Below, one piece after another: positions 32,950-39,772 of a stretch of DNA of 64,000 bases. The DNA lies in assembly GCA_000320545.1 (NCBI GenBank), contig ADNK01000630.1, positions 2,460-66,459 of the forward strand, written 5' to 3'. Made by a program: the position numbers and the translations under genes. Positions within the stretch are counted from its first letter, which is position 1. Each line of letters starts with the position of its first letter. The stretch is from Bigelowiella natans CCMP2755. Taxonomy: Eukaryota; Protista; Cercozoa. Under the pieces are notes generated by a model, which saw nothing but the letters and a program-made list of their open reading frames with translations, was not told the origin of the DNA and searched no databases.

Positions 32950-33760
32950 AAATTCTGACATTCTAGCATTGCATTTTGCAATGTGAACTACACATCTAGA
33001 CATGCTAGCATGTGAAAAAGAAATTCTACCCATGCTAGCATGGCATGCTACTACTAGCTAGCTAGATGTGTCAACAGCTGTGCTGTGCATCACTAGATCA
33101 CTAGCGCTGAGCGCACTGCTAGCACACAGCCTCTTATCAACGCTAGCATGATTATCATGTAACAATCTAGCAATCCACACAACAAACGCAACAACGTGTG
33201 CAGACTGTGCTAGCACGTTTACCAGCACACAGCACATCATCGTTGTCCGCATCAAATCTGCCATGCTAGCATGGGACAAATGTAAGCGCAACAGATCTAG
33301 ATGGATCGACATGCGTCGCAGCGCTCTCTTCTAGCTAGCTAGTCTCTGCTGACTGTAGTGTCTTAGTGGACTCGCAATTTCTTGTGAACATGATCGGCTG
33401 CGCATGGATACTACTGCACTCCTCTAGTCTAGTAGTCTCATCTAGACGAGATCAACAAGTCCATGGTTTCATCCCTTTTGCAACTTGCACGGTGTGTAGA
33501 TAGCACAAGTCTAGATGTGCCTAATGTACATTTGTGTCCATCAAAGCTAGGCTCGTGAGTACCTGCTAAATTGCAGGTGCTGTTGGTGTCGATGATGATG
33601 CTGGATGGAGAGCCTCTGATGATGCATGCGCGGGGCGTGTGGCGACTCGGACGGAGGGGGTTAGCCTTGCTGCTGCAGGTATCTAAGTGATGCTACTGTA
33701 GGTTAAACCTGGACATGTCTACCTTGCTAGCTAGATATGATCGCTTGATCGCATGGATTT
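32950..33760. other. CTAG-rich, otherwise TpA-poor intergenic tract
   Basis: Dense gctagc/tctaga/actagc words with TGCA/CATG, between the convergent RMD1-like and bestrophin genes. Confidence 0.75.
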
Positions 33761-33819
33761 CAGTTTTGTACGATGAAAAATCACTCCGTATCTGTCTCAT
33801 TTTGACTACCTAAAGTGAA

Positions 33820-36800
33820 TTAAAAACTGCCGCGGCGGCCAAGGCCACTAAACCCACTCATCTTTAAAGTATCCTCTCTTTCTTTCAAATCTTTGGTCTC
33901 ATATCCACCGATTTTACTAACGCTGGAAGCTTTCGAGTGCTTCACTTCATAAAATCCGTTCTTGCTAACACTAGATTTATTCGTTTTGCTACCACTCCCA
34001 CCGTCTGCAACATCCTGGCCTAGTGTACGCCTGCATTTACTTCCACTTCCCATATCCTGATCATTACGTCTTAACCTACTTCCACTTCCCGTATCTTGAT
34101 CATTGCGTCTTAACCTACTTCCACTTCCTCCATCCTGATTGAGATAAGTATTATCAACAGTGCATAAAAAATGACTAAATGTATTCATTGGAACCTGTAA
34201 TTTTGTTTCAGTTCCAAGTTTTGGCTTGCCATACGGGTGTATTTTTTGAATAGTATCATCAACCAAAGCCACTGCAGATCGAACCTACCGGACAACACTA
34301 CTATTAGTTCGTTTCGTGAATGAAAGAAATACTGAAATGCTGAATGAACGAAATTTTGTTTTGTATTTTAGCTATTAATTTCTACGTACATAGAGATGCA
34401 ACGGGAAATCCACAGCTGTATAACCTAATAATGTGGAAGTCAACGAAATATTCAGTGTATTTGCGTACTACTACAATTTTTCACACCGAATGGAGTTGAC
34501 AACGAAGAATGAACCTGACCATAAATCATAGTATGAGCATGACTGTAATATTCACGTTATTGTACAACACCAGCTGTTACCACTCTATCAGATGATATTT
34601 ACCTCCAATATGCCTTCGACAATGATGCTCAAACCGACAATTATAATGTAACCCAGAATAATAGATTCTACCGAATCTTCATCAATTCCATATCTCAAAA
34701 ATTCGCTTATCCAGATGCTTGCTAATACCAACTGGATCAAGAATATTGGTTACAAACTCAAATACAATAATAGCAAAATTCACACCTCAATTTTTGAAAT
34801 GATGGCCACTAAGTGTGTGTAAATATAGGGAACCTGAACATTTTAGTTTGGATATTTACAAATTTACAAAATCTCCAATAATAAGGTAAATGTAACTCGC
34901 ATTGGTAATTTACCGGAGTTTCGATAAGAGCAAACATATTTTCAATATTTGACTGCTGCGATGAAATAGATTTCTCAAGGCCCTAAAATAATTGGAAAAT
35001 TCAACGAATATGCAGCTACGAATAGGCCCGCTTCTATTTTCCACCTGAATGCAAAGAGCTGTAGATTCTGGGTGTACAAAGCGATCCGCATGTCGTCTTT
35101 ATAGAATAAGTTAGGTTCTTGTAAAAGTTGAAATCCTTCTTTCATAAACGAAAAATACCTCGCAAAGAGCCATAAATCGCTCCGAATCCATGAATATGCA
35201 AGATAATAACATCCTGCTACAGTTTTCAATTTTTTCCGCTCTTTTAGAGTGAGCAATCCCTTCAGAAATCAAGAAATATATATTCAAATCAAAATATCAA
35301 ATTTGTTACAGTAAAAAGTATTTTACCTGATACGTGAGTAGCTTTAGATCACGCTCTCCCCTTATAGCCTGCGTGAACATTATGAAAGCAGCAATTTGCA
35401 AACGAATAGCCTGGAAACATGATACAAAAGTCAGTTGACTAGTATGGAGATAGAACTTTAAATCTAGAAATAAAGGCTTCAAATACCTTTTCTCTGAAAT
35501 CGATTGAGGTTTCATCGGAAGCCGGAACATATGCTAATAGCATCTAAATTGGAGATTACAATAGTTTGCGTTTAGTGGATAGATACGATTGAGAACTAAT
35601 AGAACCTGGATAAAGTCCCTGATATTACTTGTCAGATTCTGAAAATTGGCCTATCGATATATAACTTCATCTTTAGTTCATACAATATTCTATGTGATCA
35701 CGACTACCAACATCAAGATGAAGTAAACGGTGTGATTTACCCGAGTCTCCCACCAACGAGATAATGAAATGTGCAAAAGGAGTCCAAGAAAGGCTGCTGT
35801 TAGAAGTGTCAACACGACAATAGGGCCATCTACCACAAAAAAAGACGATAAGATTTCGTTTGATTCCTATCGTTAATTAGCTCTGACCTCCGATCGGCCT
35901 AGCACACATCGAGCAACCTTCTTGAGAACCACTAACTTCACACTTTGAAGTGCAGAGGCGGGAGGCATAAAGTGTGGAAAGAGCCAAAAGTATCTACATC
36001 ACAAGATATCAGAGTTTACTTCGCTTTTAAATTTTAAAACAAATGAGCCACCAAGATTTGTCCCCATAGCTTACTGGATCTACAAGAACAAATACCGAGG
36101 GGGGTTACTTAGGTAAAATGTATTTATCATGATGCTTGTTAAGAAATGCCTTAACACAGTTCCATTGGCAGCTTTGAACCATCCATGTGAGAATAGATGC
36201 CGGGGAGCATACCTTACATCATATGCACACTAGGTGCCACTACTAAAGCCAATAAAACAATGAATGTACCAATAGACATGGCCGTTATCAGAGACGACCT
36301 AAATTATGAATTAGACTATCGTGAAACTCAACACTTGTTACTATTTGCTACGGACCTTATCAGGACCGGGCGATGCCCCTGATACCGGGTGCATCTTGTG
36401 TATATTGATATCCTACACAAAATGATTTTATCACTTTCACATTTCACATGACAATATAATCAATCACCTTTCCAATGCGCATAAGTCGTAATAGACGAAG
36501 TAAACGAAAGGCATGGAAACGGGGATTGCCTGGTATACGTTGAACATGTCAGTGAACCCTTGATTTGCGTTTGCTACAATTTTATATATACTCATTGTGA
36601 AAGCAACAATGTCCCCTGCGATGCTGAAACAATCTAGATACACCATCGGCCTCTACCGTACGATGAGATTTTAATGGAGAACACACGTTCAACAGAGGTC
36701 CTTAGTGTACTACCAGAAATAGCCTCCAACGATAGATTGCAACCCTTAGCATGAATTCAGCCTGTCGGCAAAATTCCAATGTTATCAATGCAATACTTCT

Positions 36801-38676
36801 AATTTGAGGAGGCCATAACCAAAAAGATGAAGAATATCACAAAATTTATAAGCTCCATGGTACCCCTAAAAAGATTTAAATGCTATGGTGTTATAGGTTG
36901 TTTCTCAAAATTGGTGCTAGATTAAAGTACCCATTTCTTTCGGTGAATATTTGAAAACATAGAAAGCCAATAGATGCTGCAACTAGGATAGCACTCATCT
37001 GAAGTATTAATATCTTACTTATAAATCTTAAAATCTATTCAGAATGAATTTCACTGTGTTCGGTAGCTTTCCATCAATCCATAGCACAAGTTTTTCCTCC
37101 AGTTTCAGATCGGCCAAATAATCCTGTTCGAAATTTCGAGATTACGGGGTTTCTAGATGGTTTACATGTTAACTGGGGTAGGTTACCGCATTCCTACTTT
37201 TTCTTTGTATTTTATTGTGCCTTTCTTCTTCCTCTCGGTTGAAATTCTGATTATTATTTAATTTAATATGATTTTTTGGGTAAGTATTGACATGTACCTT
37301 CAGAAACTGTCTAGTTTCAAACGTAAGCCTTGGACCCGTATAATATTGAAAACGTTTGCTGCTGGCACTTTGAGGACTCTCTTTCATTCTTCTAAATTAA
37401 TCATTTGAAGAAATAAAGAAACAACCCTCATGAATGTGTTGCTCATGCACACAGTAATTGGGGGAAAACATTGACCTGCGTTTTTCTGAATTATAAGCTT
37501 CGCTTAATTTATATGAATTCTGAGAAGATAAAGATGTGCAGTAACTAATCGCTTCTCATGACAATTTTGTAGCAGTAAAGTCTCTGCTTACCCTATTTGA
37601 CTTTTTTGAAAAAGTTGAAGTTTCATACTGCGGATGTTCCACTAATATATATTAGAGAGATTCCTAAATTCATAGCTGCTGTATCAGTTTTTACAAAGTG
37701 AGTTCATACCTCTAGAATCTGGATCTTCTATCCTCTCATCACGGTAATCGTATTGAGGATCAACGGAGACTGGAGGCGGACGCCTAAGGTCAACAGATTC
37801 TGTGTGATGCTCGGGTCTGATCCTCCTCAGTCTTTCCTTTCGTGCATTTGCTTGCATTCTAGAGGAGGACTTTCTGCGTCGCATAGGTTCTGACATAGAC
37901 TGAAGGTAGACTTTGCTTGTCTCTGTATCCTGTGTAAATTGTATTGTTTAGTCACGTACTTGCTCTCTTAGTTAAGGTAAGAATCACCGATTTCAAGGCC
38001 CTCGTTATCCTGTGTGAGCCAGTTGCAGCAACGCAGGGTTTCCGTTTCCGCTCCCATCGATTGTTTTCGTAGTCCTGTAACTGTTAATTGAGAATGAGTT
38101 AAGTTACCCTCGTGACAATTCATTTCATTTCGGATTACTAGTATTCCTTCTTGATATCGATTTACGTTGGATAATTTTGATTCTTTATCCTTCATAATAT
38201 ACGCTATGGATGGATCAGACTCATCTTCGTGGAGGAGTCGTGCAGCTGAGGAGACTAGATTTTGGTTCTAAGCAGAAAATATTATGACAAATCCATTTCA
38301 CAAAACAAGTGAAGCGTAGTATCACCTTAATTTTTGGGTTTGAGTCCAAACCACTGTGAGAACTAAATTGCTGTGATCTTGTTGCCATTGACGACATTGA
38401 AGACTGAGAATGTATCTTCCGATGCCCATAATTTGTTGGCTCAGTGGTCAAGTACAAAGAATCTTGAAATAAGTTACAGAAATTTATTGTCCATGAATAG
38501 ATAATTACATTGTGCTTACCTTGAGGGTATGCGATCTTGGGTTTGAACTTTGGCATCGATGGTGGGTCATCGTCATTGCGGTTGGAAGGTGATATGTCCT
38601 CGGAGCTGCCCTGCACTTTTCTATTTGGATTTGAACGATGATGTTTCGCCATATAGGCGTCGTGTACAGTGTGCAT
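33820..38676 (-). CDS. Voltage-sensor domain (S1-S4) fused to a bestrophin-family channel
   Basis: Phase-consistent exons 37123-37055, 36998-36931 (S1), 36865-36820 plus 36761-36714 (S2 ...FFIFLAEFMLRVAIY), 36652-36592 (S3 VYLDCFSI), 36529-36468 (S4 FRLLRLLRLMRIGK) and 36412-36356 (linker). Bestrophin motifs follow: GTVL, FLGLLLHISLSRWWETR (35829-35741), GLLTLKE, PVPYIYTHLV, EGILEVHSSLSTPFGYTAVDFP. Start codon uncertain. Confidence 0.88.
34040..34140 (-). repeat. 36-bp coding tandem repeat (GSGSRLRRNDQD) in the bestrophin C-terminal tail
   Basis: Visible in ORF 33820..34272: GSGSRLRRNDQDT GSGSRLRRNDQDM GSGSK. Confidence 0.85.
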
Positions 38677-39772
38677 CGTGCCCAAATAGATACAAGTTTA
38701 CTTCAACTAGATATTGGGGAAAACACAGAATTAGAAAGACATTTATCAGAATAACACAGCGACCTTCTCTTTGTGGCCGTGCTCACACGAAATTATACCT
38801 TTTTATTGTTGTGGTACTCAAAGATTTGTTAAAGATAACGTAGGATCATACTAAATAAAGAGATCCTAATAACATGGCATCCTGTATCAACAATCAAACC
38901 AACAGAAATATTTAAATTTTTCTGTACGCACGCATTGTTACTTGAGCACTTGCTTGGGAAGGAAACTAAGGCCTGCGGCAACACAATGAAACTTCTGCAT
39001 AAATTTAAGTGCATTCCTTCACTTTGACATCACATTTTATTTGTCGTTGTATTTGATTTGGGAGCGGTCCACACTCTTTGCAAGAAATACAGGGGGAAAC
39101 GGTTCCTTCAGGACGTTTGTTCCACAAAAATGCACAAAATAGTCGCTACCACAGTACCAATTCAACCCTCTGCACAGAACCAATTCATCGATTCACTTGT
39201 TCATTTTTGACATTTTCAACATTCATGAATGCATGAATGCAAGACTTCCATGTTCGTTGATGGCCTCTGAACGAAGCAAAAAAGGACTGCAACGGGTTTC
39301 GATAAAAATTCGGCTGAAACCTGGTTGCGCACTACTGTCGTTGTCCGTTTGTTGTGCTTGCAAACACAAAACAGCAGGATTTGTTCAACAGGATTCGTTG
39401 TTCGGCAAAAAACATCAACTACGCCGAGGCCATTGAGCACGTTCCGAGATAGATAAATGTCGCACATATGAAATACAAGCTAAAAGGACAAGCAGTATGA
39501 TATAGGTGGATGTCGCACATGTGAAATGCAATCTAGGATTGCCTTTATGTGCATCATCGAAGCGCATCAAGTTTTTTCTTTTAGACCACTCCCTGGCGCA
39601 GAAAGTTCGAAGTGATCCGACAAGAGAAAATGACTATTCCTAAACTTGTTCAAGCGTTCCGAGGGGGAAATCTTCAATTGTGAGCAAAAAAGAGAGAAGA
39701 GTTCTCCATTGTTTCTTTCTTTCTGCACTTGGCATAGTTATACACAACTAGCACGACGCTGTAACAACGACG

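What the first reader, a model, noticed from the sequence alone, without database searches (positions are those of the whole stretch)
33820..38676. Voltage-sensor domain fused in frame to a bestrophin channel: candidate voltage-gated bestrophin
Seen in sequence: seven consecutive GT-AG exons join in phase. They give S1 MSAILVAASIGFLCFQIF, S2 ELINFVIFFIFLAEFMLRVAIY, S3 RPMVYLDCFSIAGD and S4 RFHAFRLLRLLRLMRIGK (exon 36529-36468, a frame the ORF track does not show). A linker of about 30 aa then leads into a complete bestrophin (GTVL, RWWETR, GLLTLKE, PYIYTHLV, TPFG..DFP). Established knowledge: S2 FxxE, S3 Asp and (Rxx)4K are the charge-transfer and gating-charge hallmarks of VSDs. Bestrophins are pentameric anion channels, and rhodopsin-bestrophin fusions (bestrhodopsins) show that a sensor can gate them from the N-terminus. 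Topology fits, since S4 and the bestrophin N-terminus are both cytoplasmic. Inference: a pentameric channel carrying five voltage sensors, an architecture I do not know to have been described. Caveat: one junction needs a GC-AG intron (donor at 36149).
Basis: partly seen in the sequence, partly recalled or inferred. Interest (0 to 1): 0.93.

Follow-up and report, generated by a model that had tools for sequence, protein, structure and literature searches.

The report
Voltage sensor fused to bestrophin channel
A transcribed 33-exon gene of the alga Bigelowiella natans joins a complete four-helix voltage-sensor domain to a bestrophin-type anion-channel domain in one 920-residue protein. I found no description of this pairing, and if it works as it looks it would be a new way to make a voltage-gated anion channel.

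Summary
Window 38676-33820 (minus strand) is one 33-exon gene with a 920-aa open frame.

- **Transcript support:** a single 3401-nt transcript contig spans the whole gene.
- **Organism and annotation:** the organism is Bigelowiella natans. The public JGI model (Bigna1 86588) misreads the S3-S4-linker exons, so it hides the fusion.
- **Voltage sensor:** an MMETSP transcript protein identical to this gene across S1-S4 matches Pfam Ion_trans above its cut-off, over the S1-S4 positions only.
- **Bestrophin:** the downstream part matches the bestrophin families above their cut-offs.
- **Conservation:** an orthologue from Amorphochlora amoebiformis, 44% identical, has the same architecture. It keeps the S2 Phe/Glu/Arg, the S3 Asp, the S4 pattern of four Arg and a Lys at every third residue, and a conserved junction motif.
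- **Selection:** dN/dS against a closer relative is 0.11.
- **Novelty:** no further members and no paper describing the fusion were found.

That voltage gates an anion pore is inference; nothing functional was tested. The scan noted this same stretch twice in overlapping windows, not on other DNA. The joined spliced protein was never sent to a search tool.

The parts
33820..38676 (-). Whole coding region: 33 exons, 920-aa ORF (ATG 38676, stop 33822-33820)
   Evidence: Model. A single 3401-nt transcript contig spans 38784-33700. Protein-level agreement with P0002, P0004 and P0001.
37055..38676 (-). Exons 1-10: hydrophilic N-terminal region, aa 1-351. No signal peptide or TM segment. Mostly disordered, with two helices just before S1.
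   Evidence: Translation; hydropathy. AF2 pLDDT is below 50 for residues 1-260, with helices at 301-325 and 328-351. Only 22% identical to the Amorphochlora orthologue.
36931..36998 (-). S1 exon (aa 352-374)
   Evidence: Hydropathy peak at 351-369. Lies inside the Pfam Ion_trans match of P0004, residues 351-445.
36714..36865 (-). Two S2 exons (36865-36820 and 36761-36714) with N381, F388, E391 and R395
   Evidence: F388 is invariant and E391 nearly so in alignment A2 with 15 B. natans channel VSDs.
36592..36652 (-). S3 exon with D412
   Evidence: D412 is at least 90% conserved in A2.
36468..36529 (-). S4 exon: R434, R437, R440, R443 and K446 at every third residue
   Evidence: The same frame is read in transcripts P0004 and P0001. 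R437 and R440 are invariant in A2.
36270..36412 (-). Two linker exons (36412-36356 and 36298-36270), aa 447-475: a variable Pro/Gly-rich stretch followed by a conserved junction motif (KVV-S/A/T-DNGHV-Y/I-WY)
   Evidence: invariant columns in A1. Junction 36269-36213 is seen in three runs.
36080..36149 (-). GC-AG intron inside the start of the bestrophin part
   Evidence: Joint 36079>36150 with ends CT..GC on the + strand, seen in X1, X3 and X10.
34390..36212 (-). Fourteen bestrophin exons, aa about 476-786 (motifs GTVL, RWWETR, GLLTLKE, PYIYTHLV, TPFG..DFP)
   Evidence: Pfam PF01062 scores 27.9 bits on P0002, which is B. natans' own sequence from about aa 570 on. On P0001, PF25539 scores 49.7 and PF01062 scores 32.0 bits. 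All junctions from 36149 down to 34135 are listed, except intron 36051-35994, which rests on the 779-nt length match, the frame and P0001.
33820..34284 (-). Last two exons: C-terminal tail, aa 787-920, with GSGSRLRRNDQD-type repeats
   Evidence: 30% identity to Amorphochlora.

Best explanation
The gene encodes one membrane protein of Bigelowiella natans. It has a disordered cytosolic N-terminus (about 350 aa), then a canonical S1-S4 voltage-sensor domain, then a linker of about 30 residues, then a bestrophin-type channel domain and a repetitive tail.

Shown here:
- The fusion is transcribed as one in-frame mRNA.
- Both domains pass their family profiles.
- The architecture and all gating-charge and counter-charge residues are conserved in another chlorarachniophyte genus under purifying selection.

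Inferred:
- Like all solved bestrophins, the channel domain assembles as a pentamer around one central anion (Cl-/HCO3-) pore, so five sensors sit at the periphery.
- S4 ends on the cytosolic side, where the bestrophin N-terminus begins, so the topology fits.
- Voltage-driven S4 movement is passed to the pore gate, giving a voltage-gated or voltage-modulated anion conductance.
- The first 18 or so residues of the linker are variable and Pro/Gly-rich, so coupling is more likely through helix-helix contacts in the membrane and the conserved junction motif than through a rigid lever.
- The acidic Ca2+-clasp run that follows PFG in animal bestrophins (recalled, not aligned here) is replaced by YTAVD, which fits a gating input other than Ca2+.
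For: - **One transcript:** a 3401-nt contig covers all exons. The GC-AG and S4-side junctions appear in three runs from different studies. The model's exon lengths match that contig to the base.
- **VSD by sequence:** Pfam Ion_trans scores 28.5 bits (cut-off 25) on P0004 residues 351-445, matching profile positions 6-109 of 241. P0004 is identical to this gene there. The orthologue P0003 scores 40.4 bits.
- **VSD against solved structures:** a 3-sequence profile hits only the VSDs of solved Nav and bacterial sodium channels (NavMs, NavAb) among the 60 best rows shown, with E about 1e-5.
- **VSD by fold:** the AF2 model has pLDDT 70-91 over residues 300-450. It aligns to solved VSDs at Z 11.4, rmsd 2.2-2.4 A over about 100 residues.
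- **Conserved key residues:** F388, E391, D412, R437 and R440 align with B. natans' own channels.
- **Bestrophin:** profile matches lie above the cut-offs.
- **Orthologue:** P0003 (Amorphochlora, by way of P0005) has the same architecture. Its VSD is 43% identical and its channel core 51%, against 22-30% in the flanks.
- **Selection:** dN/dS is 0.107 at dS 0.53 against L007.
Against: - There are no functional data of any kind.
- The bestrophin domain is divergent: 23-50 Pfam bits, and the only PDB sequence match is bestrhodopsin 7PL9 at E 0.4. Its pore-neck positions read L/A/L rather than the I/F/F of human BEST1, by my own alignment on RWW from memory.
- The first part of the linker is poorly conserved (31% overall), which weakens a simple mechanical coupling.
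- The structural match is no better than what helical bundles often reach. A designed four-helix protein scores Z 10.8 in the same list.
- Only three organisms are known to carry the fusion. No pentamer model could be made.
- Bestrophin-like VCCN1 is already voltage-dependent without any VSD (title of reference 8 in PMC10962995).
Confidence: 0.6

Rival explanations
1. The fusion protein is real, but the S1-S4 domain does not gate the pore. It serves as an assembly, trafficking or lipid-interaction module, or only fine-tunes a channel that is gated in some other way.
For: The flexible first half of the linker is poorly conserved. TMEM266 shows that functional S1-S4 domains can exist without a known gated effector (title and abstract of PMC6392501, listed). 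Bestrophin-like channels can be voltage-dependent on their own (VCCN1, cited in PMC10962995).
Against: A module with no sensing role would not need four Arg plus a Lys in register, the S2 Phe-x-x-Glu-x-x-x-Arg and the S3 Asp. All of these are kept at 44% overall identity.
Confidence: 0.22
2. The voltage sensor has an output of its own: an Hv1-like proton path or omega current, or control of the long cytosolic N-terminus. The bestrophin domain mainly provides a pentameric scaffold.
For: Hv1 shows that a VSD alone can conduct (abstract of PMC13095418). The N-terminal 350 residues precede the VSD directly, and two helices before S1 are predicted with confidence.
Against: S1 has no acidic residue in either orthologue. 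An S1 Asp is the Hv1 selectivity determinant (my own knowledge). The N-terminus is disordered and only 22% conserved, with no Pfam domain.
Confidence: 0.08
3. The in-frame fusion is not the main product. Intron-retaining transcripts dominate, so the cell mostly makes a truncated VSD-only protein or degrades the mRNA.
For: P0004 is a 'complete' 485-aa ORF that ends inside retained intron 36269-36213. A low-depth 116-nt contig retains intron 36051-35994. L007 starts in the intron before the S3 exon.
Against: The spliced forms have the higher contig depths: 110-1026 against 15-98 for the retained piece. The downstream bestrophin part is under strong purifying selection in frame with S3-S4 (dN/dS 0.08-0.15).
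Confidence: 0.07
4. The fusion is an assembly or annotation artefact that joins two neighbouring genes.
For: None found. The public model differs from mine in the junction region.
Against: The joins appear in three runs and in one contig. Independent transcripts from two other organisms carry the same join (L006, L007). The S4 exon and the first bestrophin exon lie under 260 nt apart (36468 to 36212), with two small coding exons between them and no stop.
Confidence: 0.02

Closest known systems
Bestrhodopsins (rhodopsin-bestrophin fusions of marine algae; Rozenberg et al. 2022, as summarised in PMC10962995; structure 7PL9)
   Same: A membrane-embedded sensor domain is fused to the N-terminus of a bestrophin domain in a unicellular marine alga. 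The sensor ends on the cytosolic side. The bestrophin part of 7PL9 is the only solved chain that P0001 matches by sequence, weakly (E 0.4).
   Different: The sensor here is a 4-helix voltage sensor of the Ion_trans type, not one or two 7-helix rhodopsins. No rhodopsin family was hit. The lineage is chlorarachniophytes, not the chlorophytes, haptophytes and dinoflagellates listed for bestrhodopsins.
Voltage-gated cation channels (Nav, Cav, Kv, bacterial NavAb and NavMs; Pfam Ion_trans)
   Same: The S1-S4 domain is homologous by profile and matches by fold. It has the same S2 Phe/Glu, S3 Asp and S4 Arg ladder.
   Different: The Ion_trans match stops at profile position 109-113 of 241, so there are no S5-P-S6 pore helices. 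The attached pore domain is an unrelated family that forms pentamers, not tetramers, and conducts anions.
VSDs coupled to non-pore effectors: voltage-sensing phosphatases, the sperm Na+/H+ exchanger SLC9C1, Hv1 and TMEM266 (review PMC13095418; PMC6392501)
   Same: A VSD is used outside the classical tetrameric channel. SLC9C1 VSDs are among the best structural matches (Z 10.8).
   Different: The effector here is an ion channel of another superfamily. The 2024 review lists no such case and never mentions bestrophin.
Stand-alone algal and plant bestrophin-like channels (Chlamydomonas BST1-3, Arabidopsis VCCN1, Amorphochlora PPAP30)
   Same: They share the Bestrophin/Bestrophin_2 domain and presumably Cl-/HCO3- permeation.
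   Different: Those proteins have plastid presequences and no VSD. This protein has a hydrophilic N-terminus without a signal peptide. The two other bestrophin loci of B. natans show no S4-like motif within about 8 kb upstream.

Membership tests
Voltage-sensor domain (S1-S4 of Pfam Ion_trans, PF00520) | Profile match above the curated cut-off, confined to the S1-S4 positions | tested here: met
   P0004 (identical to this gene over aa 352-446) scores 28.5 bits against a cut-off of 25, matching profile positions 6-109 of 241. P0003 scores 40.4 bits over positions 7-113.
Voltage-sensor domain (S1-S4 of Pfam Ion_trans, PF00520) | S4 with basic residues at every third position | tested here: met
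   R434, R437, R440, R443 and K446. The ladder is identical in P0003 and P0001.
Voltage-sensor domain (S1-S4 of Pfam Ion_trans, PF00520) | Charge-transfer centre: S2 Phe and Glu three residues apart, plus an S3 Asp | tested here: met
   F388, E391 (with R395) and D412. F388 is invariant and D412 at least 90% conserved against 15 B. natans channel VSDs.
Voltage-sensor domain (S1-S4 of Pfam Ion_trans, PF00520) | Four-helix VSD fold | tested here: inconclusive
   The AF2 model has pLDDT 70-91 over residues 300-450. Foldseek's top hits are all NavAb/CavAb, but with E about 0.01. VIA gives Z 11.4 and rmsd 2.2-2.4 A over about 100 residues, yet designed helical bundles score similarly.
Voltage-sensor domain (S1-S4 of Pfam Ion_trans, PF00520) | Voltage-driven charge movement (gating current) | not testable with these tools
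   Needs electrophysiology.
Voltage-gated cation channel (full Ion_trans, S1-S6) | S5-P-loop-S6 pore module after S4 | tested here: not met
   The profile match ends at position 109-113 of 241. A bestrophin domain follows instead.
Bestrophin (PF01062 / PF25539) | Profile match above the curated cut-off | tested here: met
   P0002 (B. natans' own sequence for the core): PF01062 scores 27.9 against a cut-off of 24.2. P0001: PF25539 scores 49.7 against 27, and PF01062 scores 32.0. P0003: PF25539 scores 23.9, below the cut-off, with E 3.5e-5.
Bestrophin (PF01062 / PF25539) | Pentameric assembly with a central anion pore | not testable with these tools
   A pentamer exceeds the size limit of the complex predictor. 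AF2 of the full orthologue with 3 sequences gave pLDDT 36.
Animal Ca2+-activated bestrophins (BEST1-4) | Acidic Ca2+-clasp run directly after the PFG motif | tested here: not met
   The sequence reads PFG-YTAVD-FP. The comparison with the human acidic run is from my own knowledge, not from an alignment made here.
Bestrhodopsin | One or two N-terminal microbial rhodopsin domains | tested here: not met
   No rhodopsin family appears in the Pfam scans of P0002-P0004. The N-terminal membrane domain is a 4-helix VSD.
Hv1 proton channel | S1 Asp selectivity filter and no attached effector domain | tested here: not met
   S1 has no acidic residue in either orthologue, and a bestrophin domain follows. 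The Hv1 criterion is from my own knowledge.

The most novel reading that the evidence does not exclude
This is the first natural case of a canonical voltage-sensor domain driving a channel pore from outside the voltage-gated cation-channel superfamily. It would be a pentameric bestrophin anion channel with five peripheral voltage sensors, giving chlorarachniophyte algae a truly voltage-gated Cl-/HCO3- conductance. It would also show that VSDs can couple to a five-fold pore.
Probability: 0.5. Interest if true: 0.92.

Novelty: new variant of a known kind. Interest (0 to 1): 0.82.

Why it matters
A 2024 review of voltage sensors (PMC13095418) covers VSDs that drive tetrameric cation pores, a phosphatase, a Na+/H+ exchanger, or conduct protons themselves. 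It lists no case of an anion channel gated by one.

A VSD joined to a bestrophin would add a new class of effector. It would show how a four-helix sensor can couple to a five-fold pore with no S4-S5 linker or S5-S6 module. It would also parallel the bestrhodopsins, suggesting that the bestrophin N-terminus is a general docking point for membrane sensors.

The protein would be a compact natural template for engineered voltage-controlled anion conductances. It bears as well on how marine algae control membrane potential or bicarbonate flux.

Finally, the finding exposes an annotation blind spot. The public gene model hides the fusion, and six-frame profile scans miss the locus altogether because its exons are only 28-130 nt long.

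Tried and rejected
**Searches that gave nothing**
- Pfam on single exons by reference: no relevant hits, because the exons are 20-43 aa.
- The S4 exon against PDB sequences: nothing.
- Six-frame Pfam Ion_trans and Bestrophin scans of the whole genome do not report this contig at all. That is a limit of exon-wise search, not evidence against the domains.
- Three homologue searches, one representative search, a metagenome scan and a prokaryote genome scan found no members beyond P0001-P0005.
- ESM Atlas: the nearest clusters carry either Ion_trans or bestrophin, never both, and all score below 0.8.
- The identity of the Amorphochlora 'bestrophin-like' PPAP30 could not be checked, because the supplementary table is not held.

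**Computations that failed**
- Brute-force enumeration of splice chains gave thousands to billions of solutions or timed out. I replaced it with manual junctions checked against the contig's length.
- My first manual model was 61 nt too long and out of frame. Two donors were corrected, at 37475 and 36051.
- AF2 of the full orthologue with a 3-sequence alignment gave pLDDT 36 and was not used for fold search.

- The complex predictor was not used. A pentamer exceeds its size limit, and a partial oligomer with such shallow alignments would not have changed my odds.
- The joined 920-aa spliced model was never sent to a search, fold or look-up tool. It was used only inside local scripts, for translation, alignment to fetched proteins, hydropathy and dN/dS. 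Searches used exons by reference, or the database proteins P0001-P0004 and the loci L006 and L007.
Full report
**What is in the sequence**

On the minus strand, window 38676-33820 holds a gene of 33 exons and 32 introns. The introns are 51-105 nt; 31 are GT-AG and one is GC-AG. The open frame is 920 aa.

I laid public RNA-derived contigs and one raw RNA run on 33700-38800 (runs found). About 0.4 of the stretch's sampled words are held by runs from seven studies, as expected for a spliced mRNA. One contig of run X10 is 3401 nt long and covers 38784 to 33700 in spliced form.

Support for the junctions comes from four sources:
- Fifteen junctions are listed explicitly. They include the GC-AG intron 36149-36080 and intron 36269-36213, each seen in three runs.
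- Four upstream junctions follow from the piece coordinates of that contig.
- For the rest I placed the junctions by hand. The test was that the exon sum between 37709 and 35994 had to be exactly 779 nt, with an open frame. My first attempt was 61 nt too long. Moving two donors, to 37475 and 36051, gave 779 nt and a stop-free frame.
- Database proteins then confirmed the model independently (see below).

**Identity of the organism and the public annotation**

A search of 1.8 billion representative proteins with the 43-aa exon 34731-34603 gave one hit, P0001. P0001 is a 527-aa fragment that starts in S3 and runs through S4, the linker and the bestrophin part.

Searching with P0001 found three more proteins:
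- P0002 is the JGI model Bigna1/86588, so the genome is Bigelowiella natans.
- P0004 is an MMETSP transcript ORF.
- P0003 is 736 aa and 44% identical.

Aligned locally to my model:
- P0004 is 99-100% identical over aa 1-475. This confirms every junction from exon 1 through the VSD and linker.
- P0001 confirms the S3/S4, S4/linker and linker/bestrophin joins, including the corrected 28-nt exon 36079-36052.
- P0002 is identical elsewhere but reads the wrong frames from S3 to the first bestrophin helices. The public annotation therefore hides the fusion.

**Family tests**

Single exons are too short for profile searches, so I used the database proteins.

- **VSD by sequence.** P0004, which is B. 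natans' own VSD sequence, matches Pfam Ion_trans at 28.5 bits (cut-off 25). The match covers residues 351-445 and profile positions 6-109 of 241, which is S1-S4 only. P0003 scores 40.4 bits over positions 7-113.
- **Bestrophin by sequence.** P0002 passes PF01062 (27.9 against 24.2). P0001 passes PF25539 (49.7 against 27) and PF01062 (32.0).
- **Solved structures by sequence.** A profile of the three family members hits only voltage-sensor domains in the 60 best rows shown: NavPaS, NavMs, NavAb and Nav1.5, with E about 1e-5.
- **Key residues.** Aligned with 15 VSDs from B. natans' own channel genes, F388, R437 and R440 are invariant and D412 is at least 90% conserved. The S2 pattern is N381 ... 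F388-x-x-E391-x-x-x-R395. S4 carries R434, R437, R440, R443 and K446.
- **Fold.** An AF2 model made with that alignment has pLDDT 70-91 over residues 300-450 and a disordered N-terminus. Foldseek's top hits are all NavAb/CavAb, with E about 0.01. VIA-align gives Z 11.4 and rmsd 2.2-2.4 A over about 100 residues against Nav, Cav, SLC9C1, NALCN and TPC1 sensors. This agrees with the sequence evidence but is not discriminating alone, since designed helical bundles score Z 10-11 in the same list.

**Conservation**

P0003 is not encoded in this genome. It is 100% identical to a EukProt fragment of Amorphochlora amoebiformis (P0005) and lies on an intron-free 2679-nt transcript contig (L006).

| Region | Identity to the B. 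natans protein |
|---|---|
| N-terminus | 22% |
| VSD | 43% |
| Linker | 31% |
| Bestrophin core | 51% |
| C-terminal tail | 30% |

The gating charges, the counter-charges and a junction motif (KVV-S/A/T-DNGHV-Y/I-WY-x-PRHLFS-x-GW) are conserved across the family.

Against the closer relative (L007), dN/dS is 0.107 over 512 codons at dS 0.53. It is 0.15 in the linker and 0.08 in the bestrophin part.

The two other bestrophin loci of B. natans have no S4-like motif in the roughly 8 kb upstream. The same scan finds the window's S4.

**How it most likely works**

Shown: one mRNA, one frame, two domains that pass their family tests, and co-conservation of the two domains.

From family knowledge:
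- Bestrophins, including bestrhodopsins, are pentamers with a central anion pore (PMC10962995).
- A VSD begins and ends on the cytosolic side, as does the bestrophin N-terminus.

Inference: five sensors surround one pore, and S4 movement modulates the gate. The early linker is variable and Pro/Gly-rich, so I favour coupling through membrane helix contacts and the conserved junction motif over a lever-like linker.

The sequence after PFG reads YTAVD, whereas animal bestrophins carry an acidic Ca2+ clasp there (my own knowledge). This fits an input other than Ca2+.

The hydrophilic N-terminus has no signal peptide, which argues against the plastid-type targeting described for chlorarachniophytes in PMC10927497. 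The membrane the protein sits in is unknown.

**Rivals**

The rivals I considered are:
- a VSD that does not gate the pore;
- a VSD with an output of its own;
- dominance of truncated, intron-retaining products (P0004; the low-depth retained piece at 35965-36080);
- an artefact.

The last is effectively excluded by three runs, one spanning contig and two other organisms.

**Novelty**

Searches for bestrophin together with voltage-sensing domain, voltage sensor or VSD, for bestrhodopsin, and for Bigelowiella with bestrophin returned nothing that describes this fusion. The 2024 review 'Voltage sensors' covers channels, Hv1, SLC9C1 and phosphatases and never mentions bestrophin. No database record seen here carries both Pfam families in its precomputed annotation. 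No further members turned up in metagenomes, prokaryote genomes or the ESM Atlas.

I rate it a new variant of known kinds (sensor-fused bestrophins, and VSDs with non-canonical effectors), so far confined to chlorarachniophytes.

The joined spliced protein was used only in local scripts and was never sent to a search tool. Searches used exons by reference or database proteins and loci. The scan's earlier notes show this same stretch read twice in overlapping windows, not on other DNA.

Noticed in passing
window 35880-36660 (minus strand): The public JGI gene model (Bigna1 86588, P0002, 848 aa) reads the wrong frames from the S3 exon to the first bestrophin helices. It also skips part of exon 3. 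Its record therefore carries bestrophin families only, and the voltage sensor is invisible.
   Followed up: yes
window 36213-36269, 35994-36051; L007:1-32: There are intron-retaining transcripts. P0004 (MMETSP, a different strain with 3 amino-acid differences and an indel in the intron) ends 9 codons into retained intron 36269-36213, giving a 485-aa VSD-only ORF. A low-depth 116-nt contig keeps intron 36051-35994. The relative's contig L007 starts in the intron before the S3 exon.
   Followed up: partly
window 33769-33839; G000:C451:76243-76313 (L031): A 71-nt stretch covering the last codons and the start of the 3' UTR is 94% identical to a second locus. The raw RNA run has about 16x depth only here, with A>G at 33779, 33790 and 33819. 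Contigs diverge at 33839 into sequence that is absent from the window. Most of these reads probably come from the other, highly expressed locus.
   Followed up: partly
G000:C3708:156562-162119 and other contigs: The genome holds many Ion_trans loci, some in uninterrupted open frames of up to 1681 aa. This gene, by contrast, is cut into 33 exons of 28-315 nt. Intron density differs greatly between channel genes of the same genome.
   Followed up: no
whole contig G000:C3107: Six-frame Pfam scans with Ion_trans and Bestrophin report nothing on this contig, even at E 10, because the exons are too short. Similar fusions in intron-dense protist genes would be missed by such scans.
   Followed up: yes
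L006:1-235: The Amorphochlora transcript's frame is open upstream of the called GTG start and contains an in-frame Met. The orthologue is therefore longer at its N-terminus than the 736 aa on record.
   Followed up: partly
literature, PMC10927497: A 'bestrophin-like' membrane protein, PPAP30, from the Amorphochlora pyrenoid proteome was localised around the plastid surface. It was chosen among presequence-carrying proteins, so it is probably a different bestrophin. Its sequence could not be compared here.
   Followed up: partly
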